A stretch of DNA of 45,220 nucleotides, the filler included, from Okamejei kenojei (lineage: Eukaryota): NCBI GenBank assembly GCA_035221665.1. It is 2 parts of 2 records of this genome, joined end to end, with 100 filler letters (N's around TTAATTAATTAA, not from the genome) between each part and the next. Parts side by side here need not be neighbours in the genome. Positions count along the whole stretch, not along the records: positions 1 to 20,850 come from CM069169.1; 1 more part is not named here. One strand, given 5' to 3'. The position numbers and the translations under genes were made by a program. The stretch's first letter is position 1; every line of letters begins with the position of its first letter. Positions 104 through 19,566 of the stretch are shown piece by piece. A model generated the notes under the pieces. The model ran no database searches and was not told where the DNA came from. It worked only from the letters and a program-made list of their open reading frames with translations.

Positions 104-286
104 ATGGAGCGGGCAGCCGGGGTCGGGGCCGCCGTGTGGCTGTGGGCGCTGCTGGCGGCGGCGGTGGCGGCGGTGGCGAGCGGCGGGCCGAGCGTCTACA
201 CCAACACCTGGGCCGTGCAGGTGGCGGGCGGGCGGCAGCAGGCGGAGCGGCTCGCCCGGGAACACGGCTTCATCTACCTGGGCCAG
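104..286 (+). CDS. First coding exon of a furin-like subtilisin/kexin proprotein convertase (FURIN/PCSK4/PCSK5 group): signal peptide + start of prodomain
   Basis: MERAAGVGAAVWLWALLAAAVAAVASGG (hydrophobic signal) then VYTNTWAVQVAGGRQQAERLAREHGFIYLGQ, matching the PCSK prodomain start (furin VFTNTWAV...ARKHGFLNLGQ). Phase-0 donor CAG|GTGAGC at 286/287, where this exon ends in the family. Exon 2 was not found before the join. Confidence 0.9.
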
Positions 287-330
287 GTGAGCGAGCGGGA
301 CAGGTGGGCTTCTCCGGGCAGCCGGGCCGG

Positions 331-700
331 CATCTCCAACTGCCCCGGCCCCGGCCCCCGGCCTCCGGCCTCCGGCCCCCGGCTGACATCTCCAACTACC
401 CCCGGCCCCGGGCCCCGGCCCCCGGCTGACATCTCCAACTCCCCCCGGCCCCCGGCCCCCGGCTCCCCCGGCTGACATCCATAACTACCCCCGGCCCCCG
501 GCCCCCCCGGCCCCCGGCTGACATCCACAACTACCCCCGGCCCCCGGCCCCCGGCTGACATCTCCAACTGCCCCGGCCCCGGCCCCCGGCCCCCCCCGGG
601 CTGACATCTCCAACTACCCCCGGCCCCCGGCCCCCGGGCTGACATCCACAACTACCCCCGGCCCCGGCCCCCGGCTGACATCCACAACTACCCCCGGCTC
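331..700. repeat. GC-rich minisatellite, about 9 units of about 35-55 bp (GGCTGACATCTCCAACTAC + variable CCCCGG/CCCCCGG runs)
   Basis: The core (ga)catc(t)cca(c/t)aac recurs near 331, 386, 427, 474, 520, 557, 603, 641 and 677. Confidence 0.9.
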
Positions 701-797
701 CAGGTACTCCAAGCCTGGGCAGCATCGTCCACACACACCCTCACACTGGGTGAAGTTAGTTTGATCGATTCATGTCACTCTGAACTTCTAAATTCAT

Positions 798-1148: not shown

Positions 1149-1561
1149 TTTCCTTCTGTCCTGTTAAATTGCCACAACGAATTCACGTCGTCACTTTAAG
1201 TGCCCTTTATTTTTGCAAGAGCCCCTGTGGGAGACATGTTTTTCGCCTGGTTCAATTTGCTTCCCCCTCCCCGTAACACATAATTTCGTTCTGCGTAGAA
1301 CTGTGACCGAACAGTTCCCTATTTCTGCAAGTTCTCTGTTATTCGTCCTTGTTTGTGACATGTTGTGGCTCTGGAGGAATCATCAGTGAGTAAGGGACTT
1401 GCGTGACTGATGATGTTTGAATGCTGTGTTCTTCCTACGTTCGAGGGTTGTAATTTGGGTCTTAAGGCATCAGGCTATTAAACACGACAACCTTCAAATA
1501 AGCTCTGAATTACATAGATTTGGGGGCATTAGTTTTGTCTTTTTGCGTTATTGTTTGTCTT

Positions 1562-1674
1562 TATGTATGTGTATGTGTGTGTGTATATATATGTATGTGT
1601 GTGTTTATAAATATGTATGTGTGTGTGTTTATAAATATGTATGAATATATATATGTATGGGTGTCTATATGTAT
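1562..1674. repeat. (TG)n/(TA)n compound microsatellite
   Basis: Directly visible. Confidence 0.85.
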
Positions 1675-1880
1675 GCTGGTTTAAACCGAAGATGGATACA
1701 AAAAGCTGGAGTCACTCAACAGGTCACACAGCAACTCTGGAGAAAATAAACTAGGTGACAGTTCGTGTCGAGACTCTTTCCTGACTCTCGGTCTGAAGAA
1801 AGGTCTCGACCCGAAACATCGCCTCTTCCTTTTCTCCAGGGATGCTGCCTGACCCGCTGAGTGACTCCAGCTTTTTGTGA
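1672..1880. mobile_element. Fold-back Penelope-pLTR-like element with hammerhead-like core (1793-1820)
   Basis: Left arm (aaaagctggagtcactca...) is the reverse complement of the right arm (...tgagtgactccagcttttt). Core is ctgaaga-a-aggt-ctcg-accc-gaaac-atc. Confidence 0.7.
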
Positions 1881-3030: not shown

Positions 3031-3211
3031 TTTTTTAAAGAAGGAACTGCAGATGCTGGAGAATCGAGGGTACACAAAAAGCGAGAAACACAGCGGGTGC
3101 AGCAGCATCTAAGGAGCGAAGGAGGTCTGAAGAAGAAGGGTCTCGACCCGAAACGTCGCCTATCTCCTTCGCTACTTAGATGCTGCTGCTGAGTTTCTCC
3201 AGCTTTTTGTG
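3031..3211. mobile_element. Fold-back Penelope-pLTR-like element with hammerhead core (3127-3157) and 27-bp TSD
   Basis: TAATCCTGGAATACCCTTTCATTTCAT is duplicated at 3004-3030 and 3212-3238. Arms are inverted; core is aggt-ctgaaga(aga)-agggtctcgaccc-gaaacgtc-gcct. Confidence 0.85.
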
Positions 3212-3999
3212 TAATCCTGGAATACCCTTTCATTTCATGTTGTTTGTGTGGCTGAGAAAATATGGGAAGTAGTGGGGGTCTCGATCAGAAACGTCACCCA
3301 TTTCTTCTCTCCAGAGAAGAATCAGAGAAGAGAAGAATGACCTGAAATATCGTCCGTCCATTCCCTCCACAGATGCTGCCTGACCCGCTGAATTCCTTCA
3401 GCACTTTGTGTTCTGCACCTGTTTAAAGCCAACAGTCTGTAATAATAGGGTGGGATAAATCTGCCGTCACAGTTTTTGTTTGTTTGGAAGCAATGTAACA
3501 ACGCAGCAAAGTTGGCTAGTGTGTTTCTGTTGCAGTTGGATATTTTTGTTCTGGATTGCTATCAGCTCCGGAAGGCCTGGCTTGGCCTTTCTTGTATCTT
3601 AACTCGATATCAGGGAATGTTTTTTTGGAAATGTTGTTTCTGAAACACACACTGACTGCTTGTGCAGGTGGAAGTGTTTTGCAAATTCCACAACTGGTTA
3701 GTTGTATCGCAGTACAGTCATCTTCAAAATATGATGCATCCGAAGGTGTACTTGCCATTCTATTGAGTAATTTACAGGCCATTAAATAGGATAATTGTGG
3801 TTTAACGTCATGAGTAATTTGTGGGTTTAATTGTGCCCGAAGCCATATTTGACTTTGGTAATCATTTAGGAGTGGTTTACTTTTGCACAGTCGGATTGTG
3901 AAAAGGCCATTCAGCCTCTTGAGCCTATTCTGTATTCACTGAGAACACTCATCTGCAGCCTGATACCATCACCCCTTAACCTCTTATGGGTTTTAAGGG

Positions 4000-4600
4000 T
4001 CATGAATGTTTAATTGTCAAGTGTTCAGACAGCGCAATCATGGCATTTTTTCTTGCTGCAGCTTAACAGGCCCGTAAATGTAATATACAGGTAATATATA
4101 ATACAATAAATTAATATCAGTAATGCCAAGTAGCCATAATAATGCAAAACCCAAGTCTGTAATGCAACCAAAGACACAGTCTGTAGAAAATCATAGTTAC
4201 TGTGATCAGTGTTGTGCAGCGTTCAAGAACCTGATGGTTTTTGCTGGGAAGAAGCTGTTCTTCAAACTGAAGATAAACCTAAAAAGCCGGAGTAACTCAG
4301 CGGGACAGGCAGCAAAGAGAAGGAATGGGTGACATTTCGGGTTAAGACTCTTCAGTCTGAGTTACTCCAGCTTTTTGTGTCTATCTTTGGTGTAAGCCAG
4401 CATCCGCAGTTCCTTCTGTTCTTGTTCAACGTTCTTGAAAATGGTGATCACCGTTTTCGGGCTCCTGCACCTTCTTCCTGATGGTAGCAGCGAGATGAGA
4501 GCCAGGGTAGTTTGGGTCGTGGATGGTGGCTGACTTTTTGAGGCAGTATTTCCTGTAGATCCCTTTGATGGTGGGGATGGCAGTTACCTGTGATTTCCCG
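4000..4600 (-). mobile_element. Rex1/Babar LINE 3' fragment, interrupted by a pLTR-like fold-back (about 4270-4418)
   Basis: Minus-strand translation IPTIKGIYRKYCLKKSATIHDP..PG resembles the Rex1 ORF C-terminus. Confidence 0.6.
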
Positions 4601-6387
4601 GGCAGATCCAGATGATTCAATTTTGTTCAGACACTTTTGCAGTTAATCTAAATTTATTCGCAGTGTTTATGTCAAGTTAGTTACAATTAAATAGTTCTAT
4701 TTTCTTTCTTGGTTTCTACCTCAGGAAGTTGCAGTGTTAATTGATGCAACGTTAAACCAACAAGTAACTTTTTGTTTTTCCTGCAAAGTCTTTGCACTCT
4801 GGCCAGCTGAGTCTTCCTGGCACTTTATTTAGTTTTAAAATGTCCGTTGTTTGTCTGTTTGTTGATGCTCATGTATCGTTCAATATCCTGCCGTTCAGTT
4901 TGATCAAGGTCTGATTTGGCAAGTAGCTTTTACTGACAAAATGCTTGAAGTATTTTTGAGGACTATTCAAAGCTTTCGATTCTTTGAAACAAAATTAAGG
5001 ATTAGAAATAAACCATGAATAATAGCTCAAATATTGTGGCATGTGGGGTGGGAGGGAATTATTACCTGCCCGGGTGATCATTTGCTTAGTTCATTCTGTA
5101 CCTGAGTTTACAGCTTCTGGAATGTTTAATGTTAAAACATTGCATGTATTTATAAAGTCCTGAAAGATTAAAACGTCTTGGATTAACTGGAGAGGAAAAT
5201 ATACCTTTATTAGAAACAATTAAAATCATTGGATTTTCCTGTTGCCTCTAAACTGTAATGTGGGCTGGAACACTGGGCAGGATTGTGCTCAGTTAATCGT
5301 GCATTTCATGTTGGACCCTTGCACAATTCCATCCTACCACATAGTGCTGGAGTAACTTAGTGAGTGAGGAAGCAACTGGATAAAAAGGATGGGTGATGTT
5401 TTGGGTCGGGACCCTTCTCCTGAAGTCGCTCAATTTTTTTCTCCAGAGAATCTACCTGACCCGCTGAGTTACTCCAGCACTTTGTGTTTATCCTCTTTGT
5501 ATATACCAGCATCTGCAATTCACTGCGGAACAGCCTCCCACAGCTTAAAGTTACCCACTGTTAATTACGAAATTATAAAATGCCATCTGAGATATTGCTG
5601 GAATGTCTGCCCATAACTCTGGCCTGAAATCTGTTTACCTGGCATAACGAATTATTAATTTACTTCTTTATTGATTATTGAATATTTATGTGTTATTACA
5701 TTATTTAGCCCGTTAAGCTGCAGCAAGTAAGAATTTCATTGTTCTGCTATCAGCACATATGTCAATTAAACACATTTGATTCTTATTCATGTTGTCATTG
5801 TGGAAACCACGGGTTTGCCTGATCAGTTGCTTAATGATTAAATCGGTATTGCAGCTCAACCTGATGTGTTAGCATCGCCTGAGGAGTGGGTCTTCATTTT
5901 ACAGGTATAGATGGAAATAAATAAAATCGAGCTCTCTATTGCACAAGGAAAGGCAAGATCCAGTAGTAAGTGTCCTGTTAATGTTTGTTGTAACCAGGAC
6001 GCACGTGCTCTTCTGAGTGCATTTGGAAATTCAACCCTGGATACTGATCATTTCCCGAATGTTGGTGCATGGATCCAGAGTAATTTGAGACATCATGTGA
6101 TGTGCAGTGTTTGGAAGGAACTGATGATCTTTTGGACCTTTTGCTTCAGGAAGTCGTGCATCACTGGGATTTTCTTCATATGAAACCTTGTTCTTGCCTA
6201 TTAATGGAGTGGGATTAGTCAACAGTTTCACTGTCATTGTATGACGCAAGTATTCGTGTGGTCATGTTGCGTCCTGTCAGTTTAAAGACTGGTCCCTGTT
6301 AATGCAGTTATCTCTGCAGTGCTCTGAAGTACTTGAGCAAAACACCAAGTGCTGGAGTCACTCAGCGAGTCAGGCCGCATCTGTGGA

Positions 6388-6850
6388 CAATAGGTGTAGG
6401 CCATTCGGCCTTTCGAGCCAGCACCGCCATTCACTGTGATCATGGCTGATCATCCACAATCAGTACCCCATTCCTGCCTTCTCCCCATACCCCTTGACTC
6501 CGCTATCTTTAAGAACTCTATCCAACTCTCTTGTGAAAGCATCCAGAGAATTGGGCTCCACTGCCTTCTGAGGCAGAGAATTCCACAGATTCGCAACCCT
6601 CCATGTGAAAAAGTTTTTCCTTATCTCCGTTCTAAATGGCTTGCCCCTTATTCTTAAACTGTAGCCCCTGGTTCTGGACTCCCCCAACATTGGGAGCATG
6701 TTTCCTGCCCCTGGCGTGTCCAAACCCATAATAATCTTCTATGTTTCAATAAGATCCCCCCTCATCCTTTTAAATTCCAGAGTATACAAGCCCAGCCGCT
6801 CCATTCTATCAACATATGACAGTCCTGCCATCCCAGGAATTAACCTCGGG
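6388..6850 (-). mobile_element. CR1-clade LINE 3' fragment inserted inside a pLTR-like element
   Basis: Minus ORF ...ESRTRGYSLRIRGKPFRTEIRKNFFTWRVANLWNSLPQKAVE... is the typical CR1 ORF2 C-terminus. It is flanked by the two halves of a fold-back element (about 6340-6387, 6850-7010). Confidence 0.85.
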
Positions 6851-7639
6851 AATGGGTAGGTGCACTTGAGAGAGTTCGGGCGGAGTCTGAAGCAATGTCC
6901 TGAACTGAAATATCATCTGCCCATTTCCCTCCACGGATGTTGCCTGACCTGCTGAGTTCCTCCAGCACACTGTTTTTGCTCAAGCTTCCAGCGTCTGCAA
7001 TTTCATGCGTCTCGCCCTTTAGTTCTTGTTTGGATTAATTTCAAATCTCTGGAGTGAATACAGGAGCTCTTATTGAATACGGAAAAATATATAAATATTT
7101 ATTTTAGTTGCTCTCCACCCACCCTGCAGATTTCCCTTTGACTGTGTTCACTTTCCTGGGTTAAACAAAGCCTGTGCTCATTTCCTGCAACCTCAGGAGT
7201 GGTTCCCAATAAAAACAATAGCCACTTTTCAGGGAGGAGATGGTAAGCTTGAAGCAGTGGGCTTCTAGTGTGAGTTGTCACTCAGCAGTTGGACAGTAAG
7301 CTTGTTTGCGAGTGGTTGCTGCTTTTCGAAGAGAATGTTTCTATCGGAGGACTTTAAAACAAAAAATCATGGTATCTAATATTGTAACAAATTATAACCT
7401 TAAAAGTAGTATTACTGCATTTTAAAACAAAAATGGTTGAGATGCTGAATTCTGAATTAAAAACAATGCCAGTGATACACAACCGGCGAGGTGGGATCAA
7501 TGGCATGGGAGAACTTGGGAAGTGAGAAGCCTACAAACTCCGTACAAACAACACCCATAGCCTGGATTGATGTCGGGACTCTAGCCCAGTGAGGCAACAA
7601 CTCTCCTGCTGTGCCGCCGTGCTGCCCTGTGTCCTGTGA

Positions 7640-8487: not shown

Positions 8488-8808
8488 GTTTAGTTTAGTT
8501 TTTGTTTAGAGATTCAGCGTGGAAACAGGCCCTTCGGCCCACCGGGTCCGCGCCGACCAGCGATCCCCGCACATTAACACTATCCTACACCCACTCGGGA
8601 CAATTTTTACATTTACCAAGCCAATTAACCTACAAACCTGTACGTCTTTGGAGTGTGGGAGGAAATCGAAGATTTCGGAGAAAACCCACGCAGGTCACGG
8701 GAAGAACGTACGAACTCTGTGCAGACAGCACCCGTGGTCAGGATCGAACCCGGGTCTGCGGCGCTGCATTCGCTGTAAGGCAGCAACTCTACCGCTGCGT
8801 ACCGTGTC
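8488..8808 (-). mobile_element. HE1-type tRNA-derived V-SINE, near full length
   Basis: Minus strand has an A-box-like ggtacgcagcgg, B box ggttcgatcc, V-domain-like centre, CR1-like 3' end and (CTAAA)n tail. Related partial copies lie near 7525-7632, 9535-9670, 14025-14345 (+), 16490-16567 and 20620-20850 (+). Confidence 0.8.
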
Positions 8809-11280: not shown

Positions 11281-11492
11281 GTTCTTCCAAAGCAACATTT
11301 AAGTGAGAAAAAACAAATTGTCAAATAAGAGTTACTCCAAAGCAAAATTTAAATGAGAAAAAGCAAATTGTCACGGGCGAAACCATCAAGTAAACTTGAC
11401 AATTTGCTTTTTTCTCACTTAAATTTTGTTTTGGAGGAACTCTTATTTGACAATTTGCTTTTCCACACAAATTTTGTTTTGGAGGAACTCTT
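11281..11492. repeat. Fold-back: two direct copies of an ~50-bp unit, a ~23-nt loop, then two inverted copies
   Basis: ccaaagcaaaatttaa(g/a)tgagaaaaagcaaattgtca occurs twice at 11281-11373; tgacaatttgctttt...aattttgttttggaggaactctt occurs twice at 11397-11492. Confidence 0.8.
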
Positions 11493-12324
11493 CACTCTAT
11501 CTCGGTAAAGCAACCAACATAATCAATGTCCGAAGAAGTGTCTCGACCAGAAATGTCGCCCATTCCTTCTCTCCAGAGGCGCTGCCTGTCCCGCTGAGTT
11601 ACTCCAGCATTTTGTGTCTACCTCTAACTGTAATCAAAGACTTGTCCCACCCCAGTCATTCCTCCTCACACAGGTCTGAAGAAGGGTTCCGACCCAAAAC
11701 GTCGCCCATCCTTTTTCTCCAAAGATGCTGCCTGACCAGCAGAGTTACTCCAGCACTTTGTTTCTATCTTGGGCCAACCAACCCTAACTGTTCCCGAATT
11801 AAAGTCTGGAACTGCAGCATCAATGTAAAAGCTTGTAATCTGGAGTTTTCTAGTTTGTGCAAATTCCTTACTGATATAACTTTGCTCACAAGGTTGTTGA
11901 TCATCTCAAAGAAAATAGATTCAATGTGTGAACTGTGCAAATCTACATAAAAGGAGTGGAACGGTGGTTTTAAGGGATTTGAATAAACAGTTTGATTCAA
12001 CAGTGCAGTGCTTCATGCTTGCAAGATTTGTCTAAGAAAACTGGAGAAACATTCTGTGATACTACGAATATTAATGAAATGTCCAAATATTTTTTAGTCT
12101 GGGAGATTGCTAACCAGATTTCCTAGAATAAATACTGGATGTTAATAAAATCTGACATCAGGAGGTTGCAAAGTATCAAAATTTAGCAGCTGTTTACTTT
12201 GGCTTGATGTTTTAGAGTGTAGCTATGTGTGAACGCTATTGAGGAAGAGGATCGTTCGATAAGAAAGATGAGAGGCAACGCTGTCATTCATTTTGATGAG
12301 AAGAATATAAAAATGTAAGAAATA

Positions 12325-12784: not shown

Positions 12785-13305
12785 ATAGAAACATAGAAAA
12801 TAGGTGCAGGAGTAGGCCATTCGGCCCTTCGAGCCTGTACCGCCATTCAATATGATCATGGCTGATCATCCAACTGGGTATCCTGTACCTGACTTCTCTC
12901 CATACCCCCTGATCCTTTTAGCCACAAGGGCCACATTTAACTCCCTCTTAAATATAGCCAATGAACTGGCCTCAACTACCTTCTGTGGCAGATAATTCCA
13001 CAGATTCACCACTCTCTATGTGAAAAATGTTTTATTCATCTCGGTCCTAAAAGACTTCCCCCTTATCCTTAAACTGACCCCTTGTTCTGGACTTCCCCAA
13101 CATCGGGAACAATCTTCCTGCATCTAGCCTGTCCAAACCCTTAAGAATTTTGTAAGTTTCTATAAGATCCCCCCTCAATCTTCTAAATTCTAGAGAGTTC
13201 AAGCAGAGTCTATCCAGTCTTTCTTCATATGAAAGTCCTGCCATCCCAGGAAACAGTCTGGTGAACCTTCTCTGTACTCCCTCTATGGCAAGAATGTATT
13301 TCCTA
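12785..13305 (-). mobile_element. CR1 LINE 3' fragment (young)
   Basis: Minus ORF GLSYEERLDRLCLNSLEFRRLRGDLIETYKILKGLDRLDAGRLFPMLGKSRTRG; (ttctatg)-type tail at 12785-12800. Confidence 0.9.
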
Positions 13306-16300
13306 TGACAATAAACTTAACTTGCTTTTCATTAAGATCATGACCCTACCTTTTACTGCTGTCACTTACCTGAACCAGCCTTCTATTTTTCGATTACTTA
13401 ATATCTAAAAATCGATCTGCCTCTCTTGAAGATACTCAGCAACTGGGCATCTTCAGCCTTCTAGTACTGAGAATTTCAAAGCCTCGTTACCCTCTGGGTG
13501 AAAGAAGTTCTCTTCATTGTTGTCCTATACGGTTACCCTCTTAATTTGATGGATGACCCGTGATTCTAGAAAACCCATCTGTGTCTCAGCCCCGTTGAGT
13601 ATTGGCTGCATATTTCAATGTGGTCACCCCTCATATTTCTAAACTAGGGGGACAAGCAAACGCTTCTTAGCCCATCCTCAGGAATGACCCACCATCCCGG
13701 GAATCAAATTTTGCGTTATTGCTTCACGTATATTCCGTCGGACACGTTTTTGCGTTATTCCGTCTGAAGAAGGGTCTCGACCGGAGACGTCTCCCTTCCC
13801 TTCTCTCCAGAGATGCTGCCTGTCCCGCTGAGTTACTCCAGCATTTTGTGTCTGTCTTCAAGTATATTCCTTGTTTTGGTTGGGTAATCAGACCCCTAAA
13901 CGCACAATATGATATCTCGATATGATGTCCCCAGGGGCCTGTATAATTGTAGTAAAGCATTTCTTGTCCGCTAATCCTTGTGTATTAAAAGATTAGAGGG
14001 CGAGAGATTAAAGGATTTGGGAGTGGGACAGTGGCGCAGCGAATAAAGCTGCTACATCCAACAAACGCCAAGCACCCAGGTTCAGCCCTGACCATGGGTG
14101 CTGTCTGCGTGGAGTTTGCACGTTCTCCCGTGACTAGATTTCCCTCTCGCATCCCAAAGACGTGTGGCTTGCTGGGTTAGTTGTTGCATATTGCTCTAGC
14201 GGGTGGTGGAATGTTAGAAAATGGGGCGGTGAGGCTGCAGTGGAAATAAACATGGCATTAATGTCAGATCAGTGTGAATGGATGGTGGTTGATAGGCAAC
14301 GTCTGTGGGTCAAAGGGCCTGTTTATATCCTCCACCCCTCGGATTCTAACATATAACATGATTTTCCAAGTTTTGATGTACTTGTTAACTTTCATTTGTG
14401 TGTGTGAAAGCCCAACTTCCACGCTAGTAAATTGCCTCCATTCCCATGTGCTCTTATCTTATTTAATAACTTATCCTGTGTTAACTTAAGTGCCTCATTA
14501 CCACTTCCTTCCTAGGGTTGAGAGTTTCCTGTACTATTCACGTCAGAGTAAATTGTCTGTGGTTCCCTCTTTTCTTTCCCCTCTCCTTTAAAGGATTACA
14601 TTTTCTTCTTATTCCTTGGCAATTATATGACTGTATGAGTCTGGAAGTTATATGACTCTTTCTCATTCCCACCCTTTCCAAACCCTTTGGCTGTAGGTCA
14701 CTGGGTCCTGGGGATTTATCATCTTTAAATCACTTTCATTTCTTCTTTGAACAATTGTTAGTTTCTTTGAACTAATTTGTCGAAGACTTTAGTTCTCAAT
14801 CCTTTCAGGAAGGTCGCTTCTCTCTTCCATAAAGACAAAGGCGCAGTGTTGATTTTTTTTCTCTGCCATTTCCTCTCCCCTGATACATCTCGCTCTGCAA
14901 GTAACCCACACTGACATTTGCTCATCTTCCTTTTGCCTTACTTGAACTTAAGATGTTTGTTCACTTATTCTTATATTGTGTCGAAAGGAACTGCAGATGC
15001 TGGTTTATACTGAAGACAGACACAAAGTGCTGGAGTAACTCAGTGGGTCAGGCACCATCTCTGGAGAATAAGGATGGGCGATGTTTCGGGTCGGGGGCTA
15101 AAGAAGCCCGCTGAGTTACTCAAGCACCTTGTGTCTATGTTCATATATTGTTTTGCCTTTTGATGTGTTTATTCTTCTTTGCTTGGGAATTAATTTTAAT
15201 TATTTCATATCTCCGCAATTTTATTCATAACATTTTCAACTTTATCCTCAGTCACTTTCAAACGGGGCTATGTAGTAAAGGTACGCTGAAGAAATTGAGT
15301 GAAAAACCATGGAGGCAATTGGAGGTGGTGTAAGACATCTAATGGTGGACGTTTAACGTGAATTAACAAATGAATCTTTTCCGGTGGTGTTTTCGATACC
15401 TAAATAAGCTGTGTGACAACACTGATATCCCTTTCTCCACCGACTGGATTAATGATCGTAGCGCCAGGAAGTGCTGCAGCAAATGTTTCCCAGAGGAAGG
15501 TTATTAGGATCAAATAATTACGGAAATGAAACCAGGACAGCAATTTTTTTTTTACAGCGTTAAACACATAGGTCTTCAAAATGTTTAATGACTAGTTTTG
15601 AAAGACTTATCAAGAGGAGACTGGAGCATTTTAATTTACCTAATGTAGGGCAATTGAAATGGGATATCACTGAGGTTTCAATTCCCACAGTGACTGTAGC
15701 ATAATTATTAATTTGAATTACCTATTCATTTTGAGCTTGCACTTTAAATTCCAGCTGGTCTGTATATTGACAATACCATGACTGTTCAACACTCCGGGCT
15801 GCTAACATTGAGGGCTTTTATCCCCTTCAATTTTGAGGGATTTGGCAGGCTCAGCATTTTTGTATACCAACTGGAAAAATCCACATGATTATTACTTGCA
15901 AAATGCAAGAGAGGAAGTTTTCCCTTTTTAGTAATTTTCCATTTACTAGAGGCAGTCCTTGTGATCAGCTACGCATCATGCCTGCAAAATATAGATTGCA
16001 GCTGTGTGGGTGTCACTCGGACTGCATGGAAGTTTACATTGGAATTGGAAACAATGGTTTCTGATGGATATCATTTCTCTATAATCAAACTGTTTTGAAG
16101 CTGAAGGTGGACAAAAGTGCTGGAGAAACTCAACAGGTGAGGCAGCATCTATGGAGCGAAGGAAATGGGTAACGTTTCGGGTTGAAACCGAGATAGCTGT
16201 TTAATTTTAGAAAGAGGATATTTTTGGCTTAAGGACTTTGGGTACGAATTTTAGGTAAGCATGTTTCTCAGCACATTATATGCTTCGTGTGTGGAAAGGA

Positions 16301-16845
16301 ACTGCAGATGCTGCTTCATACTGAAGATGACACAAAGTATTGGAGTAACTCTGTGGTGAGGCAGCATGTCAGCAAAAGGGATGGATGGCATTTTGGGTCA
16401 CGACCCTTCTTCAGACTGGTCCTGACCCGAAACGTCTCCCATCTTTGTTCTCCAGAGATGCTTCTGGGCCCGCTGAGTTATTAGACGGGTTCGAACCAAA
16501 GATGTTCGAACGTAGGTCTCTGGTGCTGTAAAGCAGCAACTCTATAGCTGCGTCACTGTGCCGTCCCAAAGGTTGATATGTCTCCTGTAGATTTGTTGGT
16601 TCAGTTAGACAGTGTTCACTTGGGATACAATTTAATAAACAAAACTAAATATTGTTGCCCCATTTGGAAGGTATATGTGCCATGGGGGGGGGGGGGGGGG
16701 GGGGGTTCTGTGCCAGGGTGCCTAGGGGCGTGTCCTGCCAGGGGTCTCAGCTGGTGCTGCCGGGCGGGCAGTGCTGGGGGTTAAAAGTGGGATGAGAGAC
16801 AGGAGCGGGTACGACTTTTCCAGCCAACAGGATAGCTATGGACAA

Positions 16846-17022
16846 AAATGCTGGAGAAACTCAGCGGGTGAGGCACCATCTATGGAGGGAAGGAAATTAG
16901 GCAACGTTTCGGCCCGAAACATTGCCTATTTCCTTCACGCCATAGATGCTGCCTTACCCGCTGAGTTTCTCCAGCATTTTTGTCTACCTTTGATTTTCCA
17001 GCATCTGCAGTTCCTTCTTGAG
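16846..17022. mobile_element. Near-perfect hairpin Penelope-pLTR-like element with 18-bp TSD
   Basis: CAGGATAGCTATGGACAA at 16828-16845 and 17023-17040. Arms fold around the apex gtttcgg-c-ccgaaac. Confidence 0.85.
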
Positions 17023-17710
17023 CAGGATAGCTATGGACAACAGCTCCTCTGTGCTGCAAAGCTCTGTGTGGTAGCTGTGGACCTCCTACTTTGGAAAGTT
17101 TCTTCTGATGTTTCTTGATGCAATAGTGAGGGTGAGGTTAAGCTCCCTGATGATTCAGGTGGTAATGAATGTCCCTTCAGTTCTCCTTCATCTTTAAGGG
17201 TGATTCAGTCGCAGAATATTTCTTGGAACCTCGATATTGTCTCCTTTGTGATTTTTCTTTTAGCTTTTTTTTTTGTTGAAGATTTTTTGTTGAAACCCCT
17301 CTCTGTGTAACTCCTGTTTAATCAGTGAATCCCACAAACTCTACCTTTGTACATTACCAGAATATGAAAGACCCATGTTGCTTCCTTGGAAAGAATGGTT
17401 CATCTTTGATCATTGAAATTAAGCCAAGGAAGATGTGGTCACTTGACACGCAAGTGAAAAATGAGAAAAGGCCGCAGCTGAGATTGTGGCTTTGGCAACG
17501 AGACAATAACTCTCATACCCTGAAATCTTGTCCAAAACAATCCTTCAGCAGCGACACAGCATTTGTCCACTGGGTCTTTCCTGAAGCTGGAATGAATTCA
17601 GCACCTCAAAATATGACTTGAACCCTATTGAACAGACTGCATATTGATGACTCCACCATGCAACCAACATCGATGCTTCCTCCTCCACCAGATCTCCCCT
17701 CTGTCTTCAG

Positions 17711-18358
17711 CATGGAAATAGGCCCCTCGACCCACCGAATCCGCCCCTAACCAGCGATCAACCGTACACTAACACTATCCTACACACTAGGAATAATTTT
17801 ACTGAAGCCAATTAACCTACAAATCTGTTAAAGAAGGAACTGCAGATGCTGGAGAATCGAGGGTACACAAAAAGCTGGAGAAACTCAGCGGGTGCAGCAG
17901 CATCTAAGGAGCGAAGGAGATAGGCGACGTTTCGGGTCGAGACCCTTCTTCAGACTTTATATCTCCTCAAGGTATGCCTACTTTGAAGAAGTTCTCCTCC
18001 TCCCTACGGAGACAGTTTCACAACCTCCTCTCTAACTGCTCCCCCTCTGTGATACCCCCTTCCTTCCAACTCTACGACCACATCCTCACCCAGAAGTCTG
18101 AAGAAGGGTTTCGACCCGAAACGTCGCCTATCTCCTTCGCTCCTTAGATGCTGCTGCACCCGCTGAGTTTCTCCAGCTTTTTGTGTAACCTACAAATCTG
18201 TATGTCTTTGGAGTGTTGGAGGAAACCGGAGCTGCTGGAGAAAACCCACGGGGTCACAGGGAGAACGTGCAAACTCTTTACAGGCAGTACCCGTAGTCAG
18301 GATTGAACCCGGGTCTCTGGCGCTGCAAGGCAGCAACTCTACCGCTGCGCCTCCGTCT
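17711..18358 (-). mobile_element. HE1-type V-SINE split by a nested insertion at 17829-18185
   Basis: The halves 17711-17828 and 18186-18358 join into one SINE matching 8488-8808. Confidence 0.8.
17829..18185. mobile_element. Fold-back Penelope-pLTR-like element with two intact minimal hammerhead cores (minus 17926-17953; plus 18098-18125) and 16-bp TSD
   Basis: TAACCTACAAATCTGT is duplicated at 17813-17828 and 18186-18201. About 90-bp near-perfect inverted arms surround an ~140-bp spacer; each arm has CTGAAGA-A-GGGT(c/t)tcgACCC-GAAA-CG-TC. Confidence 0.88.
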
Positions 18359-19566
18359 CGCATGAAGGATGGGGACATTTCTTTGCTCAGTATCTGCTGA
18401 ATCTTTGGAATTCTCCACCCAAGATTGATGTGGAGGTTCAGTCACACGAGGGTATTCATAATGGTATGTGAGTTTTTAAAAAAACTTTAAGGAATCAATG
18501 GATATGCAGGAAAGTCAGTCTACCATCAGCTATAATAGCGATAAAAGGCAGGGCAGCGATGAAGGGCTGAATGGCCAGCACAGTTATTTCTTCTATTTTA
18601 GGTTCTTCATATAGTGAAAGGCATCTGGCAACATCTAATTCCCTTAGTTTTAGTTAAGTTGGGGGGATGGGGACGGGGACAAACAGCTTACTTTCACTTT
18701 GTATGTAACCAATAAAAGTCGCTGTAAATCAAAACTGTTAAGTTGGTAATGACAGACGTGAACAAGAGGTTGGAGGTTATTCTATTAATTTGGAAGGTAT
18801 AAATGCTGGAGGAATTTGCAATTTATTCATTTCAGCCTTCATAACTCTCGGCTAAATTGAACTCAATTAGCTGAAGCCATAAGTATGTTAAATCTGCTAT
18901 TTATTTTGGAACATTCAGTATTTGAATTTGATCATCAGAATAAACTATCATCTAGTCCCCATAAATTCACTCAGCGGCTCAAGAAATCTAATTGCTTGGT
19001 CTACCTTTGGTGGCCTTACCAGAACATCTTTTGGGGAAGTTTGAACAAAGAAAGCAATGAATTTTCTAAACTTGGATGCAATAAATTCCACATTTACTCT
19101 ACATTCATTATAGATGTAGCGTCTAGCTGAAGGTGGGTTGTTGCAGTGCAATTAAAATATAATTTCAGCGATCAAGCCTTGTGGTTTGTTGCCTTTAATT
19201 TCTCTAATATTCTGGCAACTTTCAACACATTCATTCACGTCTTGGCTGTGTTTTGGGTGCAGCTTTATATTTTGTTTTAATTGGTGTGAAGATTGAATGC
19301 ATCCTCAGAAAAGAATGGTGGAATTGTTCCATAGGTTACCCAACCTGTGAAGAGAAGCGCGCGTTCAGGTTTTGAATTCTGATGATAGGTCATCGACCTC
19401 AAATGTTTCTTTCTCCGTGGATGCTTACTGCCTTGCCGAGAATGTTAATGTCCCTTGTCTGCCGCATTTTGCTTTTTGACAAAGTTCTCATTCTTATTTC
19501 CATATCACAGTATGTGCCCATACTATGTTTCATTTCCTTCAATTCTCTGACCCGTAAAGATATTTA

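What the first reader, a model, noticed from the sequence alone, without database searches (positions are those of the whole stretch)
17829..18185. Self-complementary mobile element carrying two minimal hammerhead ribozymes, with a 16-bp TSD
Seen: about 90-bp inverted arms. Each has the hammerhead core CUGAAGA, an extra A, a GGGU-NNCG-ACCC stem II, GAAA, a 2-nt CG loop (palindromic ACGU) and GUC. One core is on each strand, and the unit is cleanly nested in a SINE with a 16-bp TSD. Established: Penelope-like element pseudo-LTRs carry minimal type-I hammerheads with a vestigial palindromic helix III, proposed to cleave as dimers. Inference: this is a young non-autonomous, ribozyme-bearing fold-back retroelement mobilised by Penelope RT/GIY-YIG. 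Either strand's transcript carries a ribozyme that its own antisense arm could mask. This is the best candidate for an under-described system in the window.
Basis: partly seen in the sequence, partly recalled or inferred. Interest (0 to 1): 0.8.

Follow-up and report, generated by a model that had tools for sequence, protein, structure and literature searches.

The report
Penelope-type inverted insertion with hammerhead motifs
This is a real, recent 357-bp retroelement insertion made of two inverted copies that each carry a minimal hammerhead-ribozyme motif, but its whole architecture matches what is already described for Penelope-like retrotransposons, so it is a clean example of a known kind and not a new system.

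Summary
Element 17829-18185 has two 93-nt arms that differ at one base. It sits between perfect 16-bp duplications inside a SINE that is uninterrupted elsewhere in the window. Each strand carries an intact minimal hammerhead core: CUGAAGA, one extra A, a GGGU/ACCC stem II, GAAA, a palindromic ACGU and GUC. Chance expectation is 0.0005 per window.

The element belongs to a very abundant family: about 25 arms, 10.6% of the window. The family shows the published structural signatures of Penelope-like element (PLE) insertions:
- constant 3' ends and variable 5' truncation;
- head-to-head inverted copies;
- a tail of about 36 bp at only one end;
- duplications of 8 to about 27 bp;
- a minimal hammerhead with the PLE-specific extra nucleotide.

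The inner junction differs in every fold-back copy. The central 133 bp belongs to a longer, rarer family member. The fold-back is therefore most likely made at insertion from two truncated cDNAs and is not a hairpin element that propagates as a unit.

No RT/GIY-YIG gene lies in the window, no Rfam hammerhead model matches, and 13 copies show no covariation. Cleavage is untested. A full transcript would fold into a roughly 95-bp duplex (-216 kcal/mol) that hides the ribozyme.

Verdict: new member of a known kind, modest interest.

The parts
17813..17828 (.). Left copy of the 16-bp target-site duplication TAACCTACAAATCTGT, within the host SINE.
   Evidence: The uninterrupted SINE copy carries this 16-mer once, at 8626-8641.
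17829..17864 (-). The 'tail': a 36-nt 3' extension found beyond one arm only. It contains the family-conserved motif CCAGCATCTGCAGTTCC (17836-17852, minus strand).
   Evidence: the motif occurs 8 times in the window, once in each of 8 fold-back insertions and never beside an arm that lacks an inverted partner. [quoted passage not shown]
17865..17957 (-). Tail-bearing arm. It is a 5'-truncated copy read on the minus strand, stopping 4 nt upstream of C3 of the hammerhead core.
17926..17953 (-). Minimal hammerhead motif on the minus strand (C3 at 17953 to C17 at 17926). The predicted cut lies between 17926 and 17925. The apparent 7-bp helix I with GGAGAUA (17962-17968) is created by the junction with the other copy and is not native.
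   Evidence: descriptor hit. (loose ends show that sequence from 17961 onward belongs to the plus-strand copy).
17958..17960 (.). A 3-nt filler (TAT) at the head-to-head junction.
   Evidence: Read directly, together with the loose-end position 17961.
17961..18093 (+). Sequence natively upstream of the plus-strand hammerhead. It is part of a longer, 30-100 times rarer family member, truncated here at 17961.
   Evidence: Summed depth is 4e4-1.5e5 here against 2-5e6 on the arms. About 170-200 contigs per DNA run continue 5' of 17961 with a shared sequence. A 112-nt contig with 1 mismatch is present in a possible RNA run. No other copy lies in the window.
18094..18185 (+). Tail-less arm: the 3' part of the longer plus-strand copy, ending at ...TTTTTGTG(T).
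18098..18125 (+). Minimal hammerhead motif on the plus strand (C3 at 18098 to C17 at 18125). The predicted cut lies between 18125 and 18126. Native helix I is only G.U plus C-G.
18186..18201 (.). Right copy of the 16-bp target-site duplication.

Best explanation
The element is one insertion event of a Penelope-like retroelement family. It consists of two 5'-truncated cDNA copies of the family's 3'-terminal module, joined head to head with their 3' ends facing outward.

Inferred mechanism, following the in vitro behaviour of the Anolis PLE protein:
1. A PLE RT/GIY-YIG ribonucleoprotein, encoded elsewhere in the genome, cut both strands of an AT-rich site in a SINE with a stagger of about 16 bp.
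2. Reverse transcription was primed from both nicks.
3. It started internally on the template RNA at either of two sites about 36 nt apart. One end therefore carries the tail (17829-17864) and the other ends at ...TTTGTGT (18185/6).
4. One cDNA stopped 4 nt upstream of C3 of the hammerhead core (129 nt). The other ran 133 nt further upstream (about 225 nt).
5. The two were joined with 3 filler bases.

Each copy carries the family's minimal type I hammerhead motif about 60 nt from its 3' end. That is why one motif lies on each strand. The motifs are intact because the insertion is young.

In the source element the motif most likely acts, as proposed for PLEs, as a weak ribozyme that needs a dimer or protein help to process tandem or pLTR transcripts. 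In this copy it is a passenger. Any read-through transcript would fold into a duplex of about 95 bp that sequesters it.

Shown here: the anatomy, the family membership of the arms, the variable junctions and TSDs, the one-tail rule, and the RNA energetics. Inferred: the enzyme, priming on both strands, and any ribozyme activity.
For: - Anatomy and TSD.
- The family has constant outer (3') ends at arm position about 93 or about 124-129. Inner (5') ends are variable, at positions 2-69.
- All nine fold-back insertions have different inner junctions.
- The tail motif is present exactly once in 8 of 9 fold-backs and beside 0 of 5 arms without an inverted partner (Fisher p about 0.003, computed by hand).
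- TSDs are 8, 9, 12, 16, about 18-20 and about 27 bp.
- The hammerhead core has every conserved nucleotide plus the PLE-specific traits listed in PMC4209133: a nucleotide between A9 and G10.1, a G10.1-C11.1 pair, and a palindromic vestigial helix III.
- The central region is part of a longer repeat.
- Literature: an inverted 5'-truncated copy adjacent head to head, with a 30-40-bp tail often at one end only (PMC8557442). Inverted pLTRs with a 31-bp tail on one of them and 9-10-bp TSDs (PMC3846280). The PLE protein cleaves and extends both DNA strands, has two internal RT start sites that define the tail, and uses uncleaved RNA as the main template (PMC11167929). Dual minimal hammerheads on opposite strands 100-700 bp apart were already noted in Schistosoma (PMC4209133).
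Against: - No RT or GIY-YIG coding sequence was found in the window. ORFs of 90 aa or more gave no transposon domain. No autonomous partner could be fetched.
- No Rfam hammerhead model matches, even at E up to 10.
- Helix I is only 2-3 bp, and 13 copies show no compensatory change.
- Read depth drops sharply, 30-fold or more, just upstream of the hammerhead core. Many contigs join two complete arms directly (joint 17956 to 18095 in 20-23 contigs per run). A short defined unit or a propagating hairpin would also explain both.
- Random priming of the two strands does not by itself predict exactly one tail per insertion.
Confidence: 0.7

Rival explanations
1. One reading: the fold-back itself is a non-autonomous element that propagates as a unit. 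A hairpin RNA (antisense arm, sense arm, tail) would be copied whole by a PLE reverse transcriptase.
For: - Every fold-back has the same asymmetric plan, with one tail.
- The most frequent joints in public contigs fuse two complete arms.
- Read depth has a sharp 5' boundary at the start of the arm.
- The antisense arm carries Pol III box A-like (TAACTCAGCGG, 2 mismatches) and box B-like (GGGTCGAGACC, 1 mismatch) motifs 51 nt apart. The sense arm ends in T4-T5, so a hairpin transcript is conceivable.
Against: - Each of the nine fold-backs in the window has a different, asymmetric inner junction.
- The closest relative (3036-3213, 97-98% identical) has a different junction and no central region.
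- Single arms, a tandem pair (11528/11673) and an arm pair enclosing an unrelated 460-bp repeat also occur.
- The central 133 bp is a truncated piece of a longer element.
- The one-tail, head-to-head plan is already described as an outcome of PLE insertion (PMC8557442, PMC3846280).
- ARAGORN finds no tRNA-like gene.
Confidence: 0.15
2. The hammerhead-like core is not a ribozyme here. It would be a fortuitous or relic motif, for example the reverse complement of a tRNA T-arm/box B-like stem-loop, in a retroposon tail that serves only as an RT recognition module.
For: - No Rfam hammerhead hit.
- Helix I is paired in only 40% of cells, with no covariation.
- Across the window's copies the core is no better conserved than the rest of the arm (0.81 against 0.79 and 0.85).
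- Stem II coincides with a box B-like 11-mer on the other strand.
- The MFE folds of the local segment and of the 129-nt arm plus tail do not adopt the hammerhead. In the arm-plus-tail fold the tail pairs with the 5' core strand.
- Published PLE hammerheads cleave poorly in vitro, and cleavage is dispensable for insertion (PMC4209133, PMC11167929).
Against: - All conserved core nucleotides, plus three PLE-specific idiosyncrasies, co-occur at 0.0005 expected per window.
- The motif sits where PLE hammerheads sit, tens of nt upstream of the RT start sites (PMC11167929).
- The Anolis PLE hammerhead, with the same minimal design, does cleave when its protein is present (PMC11167929).
Confidence: 0.1
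3. It is a non-LTR retrozyme, that is, a tandem hammerhead repeat that spreads through small circular RNAs, or a fragment of one.
For: - One tandem pair of arms with 146-bp spacing exists at 11528-11763.
- Vertebrate retrozymes, including those of one chondrichthyan, are reported as PLE-derived (bioRxiv 10.64898/2026.07.22.740005).
Against: - The element is an inverted pair, not a tandem one. Each strand has only one sense hammerhead, so a unit-length RNA cannot be excised.
- The 5' ends of copies do not coincide with the predicted cleavage site. The arms include the whole core upstream of GUC.
Confidence: 0.04
4. It is a MITE or fold-back DNA transposon with terminal inverted repeats.
For: The long, near-perfect inverted repeats and flanking duplication.
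Against: - The TSD length varies from 8 to about 27 bp among family members.
- The ends are asymmetric, with a tail on one side only.
- The arms are truncated from the inside and not the outside.
- Single arms are common.
Confidence: 0.01

Closest known systems
Penelope-like element insertions with inverted pLTRs and a one-sided tail (Penelope/Poseidon/Neptune clades; e.g. Pen2a_Av of Adineta vaga, PMC3846280; general scheme in PMC8557442)
   Same: Head-to-head inverted 5'-truncated copies with 3' ends outward. A 30-40-bp extension at only one end. Flanking TSDs of variable length. A hammerhead motif in the terminal repeat. Heavy 5' truncation. Partial tandems and captured unrelated sequence between repeats also occur in the window.
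   Different: No ORF lies between or beside the repeats here. Both copies are extremely short (129 and about 225 nt). The local density is very high (10.6% of 20.85 kb). No link to an autonomous element was demonstrated.
Minimal type I hammerhead ribozymes of metazoan PLEs (Cervera and De la Pena 2014, PMC4209133; the dimer-cleaving variants of Lunse et al. 2017, cited in PMC6765202 and not read)
   Same: A complete catalytic core. An unpaired nucleotide between A9 and G10.1. A G10.1-C11.1 pair. A 1-bp helix III with a palindromic 2-nt loop (ACGU). A short helix I. Occurrence as dual motifs on opposite strands 100-700 bp apart, as reported in Schistosoma.
   Different: Stem II is 4 bp (5 if the loop-closing pair forms). 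The Schistosoma families have 7-8 bp. Helix I is only 2-3 bp, like the Drosophila virilis variant. No activity data exist for this sequence.
Poseidon PLE of Anolis carolinensis (PAc), studied in vitro (Frangieh et al. 2024, PMC11167929)
   Same: The geometry matches. The hammerhead cut site lies tens of nt upstream of two adjacent internal RT start sites, and the distance between those sites defines the tail. Here the cut site is 61 nt from the arm end and about 97 nt from the tail end. In PAc the corresponding distance to the RT start sites is about 85-92 nt (111-118 nt into the ORF, cut site 26 nt after the start codon). The uncleaved hammerhead is retained in inserted copies. The target is AT-rich.
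   Different: In PAc the ORF starts at stem II. Here an ATG lies 21 nt downstream of the cut site. Its frame stays open through the tail only in this young subfamily and is closed in older ones. No sequence similarity was tested.
Non-LTR retrozymes and Schistosoma Sm-alpha hammerhead SINEs
   Same: Short, non-coding, highly repeated retroposed sequences that carry type I hammerheads. They are probably dependent on PLE enzymes.
   Different: Those are tandem or promoter-plus-ribozyme units cleaved to unit length. This element is an inverted pair with one sense motif per strand, and its ends are not defined by cleavage.

Membership tests
Hammerhead ribozyme, minimal PLE-type (type I) | Conserved core: C3 U4 G5 A6 N7 G8 A9, G12 A13 A14, A15.1-U16.1, H17 | tested here: met
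   Both arms match the strict descriptor, against 0.0005 expected per window.
Hammerhead ribozyme, minimal PLE-type (type I) | Helix II with a G10.1-C11.1 pair, and an unpaired nucleotide between A9 and G10.1 | tested here: met
   A, then GGGU(C/U)UCGACCC. Stem II is paired in 86.5% of cells across 13 copies. The trait is listed in PMC4209133.
Hammerhead ribozyme, minimal PLE-type (type I) | Vestigial helix III with a palindromic sequence that allows a dimeric helix III | tested here: met
   A15.1-CG-U16.1 gives ACGU. Dimer formation itself was not tested.
Hammerhead ribozyme, minimal PLE-type (type I) | Helix I between the sequence 5' of C3 and the sequence 3' of the cleavage site | tested here: inconclusive
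   The native context gives only G.U plus C-G (plus strand). 40% of cells pair across copies. The 7-bp helix on the minus strand is a junction artefact.
Hammerhead ribozyme, minimal PLE-type (type I) | Compensatory covariation in the stems across family members | tested here: inconclusive
   0 compensatory changes in 13 copies. Two stem II pairs are invariant. The copies are neutral decay products of a few masters, so the test has little power.
Hammerhead ribozyme, minimal PLE-type (type I) | Match to curated covariance models (Rfam hammerhead families) | tested here: not met
   No hammerhead hit at the gathering score or at E up to 10. This is expected for motifs without helix III, but it remains a negative result.
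Hammerhead ribozyme, minimal PLE-type (type I) | Site-specific self-cleavage 3' of H17 | not testable with these tools
   Only contigs were available, no raw RNA reads, so RNA ends cannot be seen.
Penelope-like element (insertion product) | Constant 3' ends with variable 5' truncation | tested here: met
   Outer ends lie at arm position about 93 or about 124-129. Inner ends lie at positions 2-69.
Penelope-like element (insertion product) | An adjacent inverted 5'-truncated copy, head to head | tested here: met
   This element, and 8 other insertions in the window.
Penelope-like element (insertion product) | An optional 30-40-bp tail, typically at one end only | tested here: met
   The 36-nt tail at 17829-17864. 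The motif occurs once per fold-back in 8 of 9.
Penelope-like element (insertion product) | Target-site duplication of variable length | tested here: met
   8, 9, 12, 16, about 18-20 and about 27 bp.
Penelope-like element (insertion product) | Derivation from, or mobilisation by, an element that encodes a telomerase-like RT and a GIY-YIG endonuclease | not testable with these tools
   No such ORF is in the window. The metagenome DNA scans and the protein search found nothing that could be extended.
Non-LTR retrozyme | Tandem direct repeats that each hold a hammerhead, allowing excision of unit-length (circular) RNA | tested here: not met
   The two motifs lie on opposite strands. Only one 146-bp-spaced tandem pair exists elsewhere, at 11528/11673.
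MITE / fold-back DNA transposon | Symmetric terminal inverted repeats and a TSD of fixed length | tested here: not met
   A one-sided tail, and TSDs of 8 to about 27 bp.
tRNA-derived SINE | A tRNA-like head with Pol III A and B boxes, and a LINE-type 3' tail | tested here: inconclusive
   Box A-like (2 mismatches) and box B-like (1 mismatch) motifs lie on the antisense arm. ARAGORN finds no tRNA, Rfam gives no tRNA hit, and there is no poly(A) or microsatellite tail. The direction of truncation is opposite to what such a SINE would show.

The most novel reading that the evidence does not exclude
The hairpin form has become a replicating unit of its own. The antisense arm would supply Pol III-like A and B boxes and the sense arm a T-run terminator, giving a hairpin RNA of about 190 nt. 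PLE enzymes would copy this RNA, with the hammerhead kept masked until the duplex is opened. This would explain three observations: exactly one tail per fold-back, the sharp 5' boundary 2 nt upstream of C3, and the prevalence of complete-arm fusions. It would make this family, at about a tenth of the local sequence, a major genomic source of both ribozyme motifs and long intronic dsRNA.
Probability: 0.12. Interest if true: 0.6.

Novelty: new member of a known kind. Interest (0 to 1): 0.3.

Why it matters
The element is an unusually clean, young example of the complex head-to-head insertions that Penelope-like elements make. It has a perfect 16-bp TSD, arms that differ at 1 of 93 bases, and a known empty-site sequence.

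The in-window sample adds two small quantitative observations:
- The full tail motif accompanied the inverted architecture in 8 of 9 fold-backs and 0 of 5 arms without an inverted partner.
- Inserted copies retain the complete, uncleaved hammerhead.

Both fit the recent in vitro picture of priming on both strands, two internal RT start sites and uncleaved RNA as template.

The family's density matters for annotation. About 25 arms cover 10.6% of 20.85 kb, and public contigs show very high summed depth in at least three related organisms. Automated pipelines handle PLE fragments poorly. Perfect intronic hairpins of about 95 bp are also potential substrates for RNA editing or small-RNA pathways. 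None of this changes current understanding of ribozymes or PLEs.

Tried and rejected
- **Rfam.** The gathering-score scan of the whole piece and the relaxed scan (E up to 10) of 17700-18320 gave no hammerhead or tRNA hit, only chance-level miRNA, snoRNA and sRNA matches.
- **First DNA pattern.** My first pattern for the core was mis-spaced and found nothing. It was replaced by a scripted descriptor.
- **Search for an autonomous partner or more copies.** Two exact-pattern scans of metagenome contigs gave 0 hits. A protein search with the 57-aa ORF across the central region gave no candidates. Pfam on that ORF and on all ORFs of 90 aa or more found no transposon domain.
- **Literature search for the element's own sequence strings.** 0 papers.
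- **Central region.** I suspected homology to the 54-nt linker upstream of the arm at 11673. nhmmer and blastn do not support it.
- **Core conservation.** I tested whether the hammerhead core is better conserved than the rest of the arm. It is not.
- **Covariation.** None was found.
- **The 7-bp helix I on the minus strand (GGAGAUA/UAUCUCC).** I first took it as real. I rejected it once one search showed that this sequence belongs to the other, plus-strand copy.
- **Orthologous site in related organisms.** Logan contigs break at the repeats, so this could not be decided.
- **Organism names.** They are coded. My impression that the repeats look like those of cartilaginous fishes is from memory only and was not tested.
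- **Consensus.** I did not build or report a full-length family consensus.
Full report
**1. The observation**

- The repeat finder reports inverted arms at 17860-17957 and 18094-18191 (98 nt, 98% complementary, 136 nt apart). It also reports a perfect 16-bp direct repeat, TAACCTACAAATCTGT, at 17813-17828 and 18186-18201.
- Trimmed to the family-defined arm, the two 93-nt arms (17865-17957 on the minus strand, 18094-18186 on the plus strand) differ at one base, the C/T in the stem II loop.
- One or two bases (T, TA) at the right end could belong to the arm or to the duplication.
- A second, uninterrupted copy of the host SINE at 8513-8799 aligns to the left flank up to 8641 and to the right flank from 8626. 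The flanks overlap by exactly the duplicated 16-mer.
- Contigs from other SINE copies in public runs also bridge the site without the element (joints 17823/17828 to 18203).
- A scripted minimal-hammerhead descriptor finds two hits in the 20,850-bp piece, the two arms (C3 at 18098 on the plus strand and at 17953 on the minus strand). First-order Markov surrogates give 0.0005 hits per window.

The element is asymmetric: a 36-nt extension (17829-17864) lies beyond the left arm only.

**2. What surrounds it: a very abundant family**

- nhmmer with one arm finds about 25 arms in the window. They cover 2,201 of 20,850 bases, or 10.6%.
- They form nine fold-back insertions: about 1676-1881, 3036-3213, 4277-4417, 5337-5521, 6340-7004, 14985-15134, 16296-16504, 16845-17019 and this one.
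- There are also single arms (10381, 13762, 16189), one tandem pair with 146-bp spacing (11528/11673) and some fragments.
- Only the two arms of the studied element still have an intact hammerhead core. The others are decayed, so this is the youngest copy in the window.
- Logan contigs of four runs were laid on 17600-18420. The arms have a summed word depth of 2-5 million, against 10-20 on the unique left flank. This holds in three differently coded organisms and in a possible RNA run. Summed depth is not a copy number, but the family is clearly enormous and shared by related species.

**3. Which way the copies were made**

In all copies the outer ends are constant. An arm ends either at ...TTTGTGT (arm position about 93) or about 30-36 nt further on, after the conserved motif CCAGCATCTGCAGTTCC.

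The inner ends are variable, at positions 2, 3, 4, 6, 9, 10, 14, 17, 23, 35, 65 and 69, and some copies extend upstream of the core. Constant 3' ends with variable 5' truncation are the signature of target-primed reverse transcription. They also fix the hammerhead-sense strand as the template strand.

TSDs of other family members are 8, 9, 12, about 18-20 and about 27 bp. This excludes a DNA transposase.

**4. The fold-back is most likely built at insertion**

- Each of the nine fold-backs has its own asymmetric inner junction.
- The closest relative of the studied element is 3036-3213, 97-98% identical in the shared parts. There the tail-bearing arm is truncated at position 35 and fused directly to a nearly complete other arm. 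The studied element instead has a complete tail-bearing arm, three filler bases (17958-17960) and a second copy that runs 133 nt further upstream.
- That central stretch has no other copy in the window but is itself repeated: summed depth is 4e4-1.5e5. In about 170-200 contigs per DNA run it is preceded by a shared sequence that is absent here (loose end before 17961). It is therefore the 5'-truncated remainder of a longer family member on the plus strand.
- One consequence: the attractive 7-bp helix I on the minus strand (GGAGAUA with UAUCUCC) is an accident of the junction.

**5. The one-sided tail**

The tail motif occurs eight times in the window. It occurs exactly once in each of eight fold-backs, and the ninth has a shorter tail. 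It never follows any of the five arms that lack an inverted partner. By hand, Fisher's exact test for 8 of 9 against 0 of 5 gives p of about 0.003.

The tail looks like a diverged duplicate of the arm's last 24 nt (family D1). The two alternative 3' ends therefore each follow a ...TTCTCCAGC... motif.

**6. Comparison with the literature**

These features are the published description of Penelope-like element insertions.
- Craig et al. [quoted passage not shown] - Arkhipova et al. 2013 (PMC3846280): inverted pLTRs with a 31-bp tail on one of them, TSDs of 8-10 bp or none, palindromic head-to-head junctions, and unrelated sequence captured between solo pLTRs. The 6340-7004 copy here encloses a 460-bp unrelated repeat in the same way.
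- Frangieh et al. 2024 (PMC11167929): a purified PLE protein cleaves and extends both DNA strands. It starts reverse transcription at two adjacent internal sites whose distance corresponds to the tail. It prefers AT-rich targets and mainly uses RNA that the hammerhead has not cleaved.
[quoted passage not shown] All three are present here. The paper also reports dual motifs on opposite strands 100-700 bp apart.

The geometry fits too. The predicted cut site lies 61 nt from the tail-less end and about 97 nt from the tail end. In the Anolis element the RT start sites lie 85-92 nt downstream of the cut site.

In this young subfamily an ATG at arm position 54 opens a frame that runs 13 codons to the arm end and 25 to the tail end (ORF 17817-17903 on the minus strand). 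This recalls the rotifer pLTR that holds the first 12 codons, or 22 with the tail (PMC3846280). The frame is closed in older subfamilies, so I treat this as a lead only.

**7. The ribozyme question**

For:
- The core is complete and carries the PLE-type idiosyncrasies.

Against, or neutral:
- No Rfam hammerhead model matches, even at E up to 10.
- Native helix I is 2-3 bp.
- In 13 aligned copies stem II is 86.5% paired with two invariant pairs, helix I is 40% paired, and there are no compensatory changes.
- The core is no better conserved than the rest of the arm.

These copies are neutral decay products of a few source sequences, so the covariation test has little power.

Folding gives -216.4 kcal/mol for the whole plus-strand transcript (z = -26.7) and -219 for the minus strand. 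The arms form a duplex of about 95 bp that buries the motif.

The MFE folds of the local segment and of the 129-nt arm plus tail do not adopt the hammerhead. In the arm-plus-tail fold the tail end pairs with the 5' core strand (GAAGAAGG with CCUUCUU) and CAGCAUCU pairs with AGAUGCUG. Cleavage cannot be judged here because only contigs were available, not raw RNA reads.

**8. What remains unexplained**

- Read depth falls 30-fold or more within one 28-nt bin just upstream of the core.
- The commonest joints fuse two complete arms (17956 to 18095, 20-23 contigs per run).
- Every fold-back has exactly one tail.

These points are compatible with the literature's 'EN-mediated resolution' or self-priming ideas. 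They are also what a propagating hairpin unit would give.

The antisense arm carries Pol III box A-like and box B-like motifs 51 nt apart, and the sense arm ends in a T-run. ARAGORN and Rfam see no tRNA, and the direction of truncation argues against a tRNA-SINE reading. I keep the propagating-hairpin reading as the novel case, at about 0.12.

**9. Limits**

- No RT/GIY-YIG gene lies in the window, and none could be fetched. Penelope mobilisation is therefore inferred from architecture.
- Organism names are coded. PLEs are reported in all vertebrate lineages examined (PMC4350176), and PLE-derived retrozymes in one chondrichthyan (bioRxiv 10.64898/2026.07.22.740005).
- No full consensus of the family was built or reported.

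**10. Verdict**

It is best explained as a young, dead-on-arrival Penelope-type insertion made of two inverted, 5'-truncated copies, each carrying the family's minimal hammerhead motif. It is a new member of a known kind. Interest is modest (0.3). The value lies mainly in its clarity, the family's density, and the small-sample link between the tail and the inverted architecture.

Noticed in passing
window 104-298 (+), ORF 104-475: The start of a subtilisin-like proprotein convertase gene. The ORF begins with a signal-peptide-like stretch and matches the Pfam S8 pro-domain (residues 35-65, E = 3.7e-08). The rest of the window is probably its first intron, so the studied element would be transcribed on the plus strand as part of the pre-mRNA.
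   Followed up: partly
window 322-704: A GC-rich minisatellite of 37-46-bp units (CCCCGGCCCCCGGCTGACATCTCCAACTACCCCCGG-like, about 9 copies) directly after the coding start. It inflates the apparent ORFs on both strands.
   Followed up: no
window 6340-7004 and 12802-13265: A family insertion whose two inverted arms enclose about 460 bp of an unrelated repeat. That repeat recurs without arms at 12878-13265 (73-79% identity). It resembles the 'captured sequence between solo pLTRs' described for rotifer Penelope elements.
   Followed up: partly
window 11528-11763: Two arms in direct orientation with 146-bp spacing: a partial tandem, pLTR-like or retrozyme-like. A possible 8-bp TSD (CAACCAAC) flanks it.
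   Followed up: partly
window 17829-17957 (minus strand) and the other tail-bearing copies: The tail is complementary to two parts of its own arm: CAGCAUCU with AGAUGCUG, and CCUUCUU with the GAAGAAGG of the hammerhead 5' core strand. The 129-nt arm plus tail therefore folds into a panhandle that competes with the hammerhead fold. The tail also resembles a diverged duplicate of the arm's last 24 nt.
   Followed up: partly
antisense strand of the arms, e.g. 11528-11618, 13762-13852, 18094-18185: Pol III box A-like (TAACTCAGCGG, 2 mismatches; 3 in the studied copy) and box B-like (GGGTCGAGACC, 1 mismatch) motifs lie 51 nt apart. The box B-like 11-mer is the reverse complement of hammerhead stem II. 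The sense arm ends with T4-T5.
   Followed up: partly
window 11303-11468: An unrelated AT-rich palindrome: 60-nt arms, 90% complementary, with a 46-nt spacer. It may be a MITE-like element.
   Followed up: no
window 1530-1686: A TG/TA-rich low-complexity tract (TGTATGTGTGTG... units). It lies immediately upstream of the fold-back insertion at 1676-1881, whose 9-bp TSD (TATATGTAT) lies in it.
   Followed up: no
window 17600-18420 in public runs: Position 18125, the C17 of the plus-strand hammerhead and part of a CpG, reads T in about 14-32% of summed depth in the four runs laid, three coded organisms and a possible RNA run. GUU still satisfies the NUH rule. Apart from this site, no position of either arm's core reached the 10% variant threshold, while seven sites in the rest of the left arm and its tail, and three in the rest of the right arm, did.
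   Followed up: no
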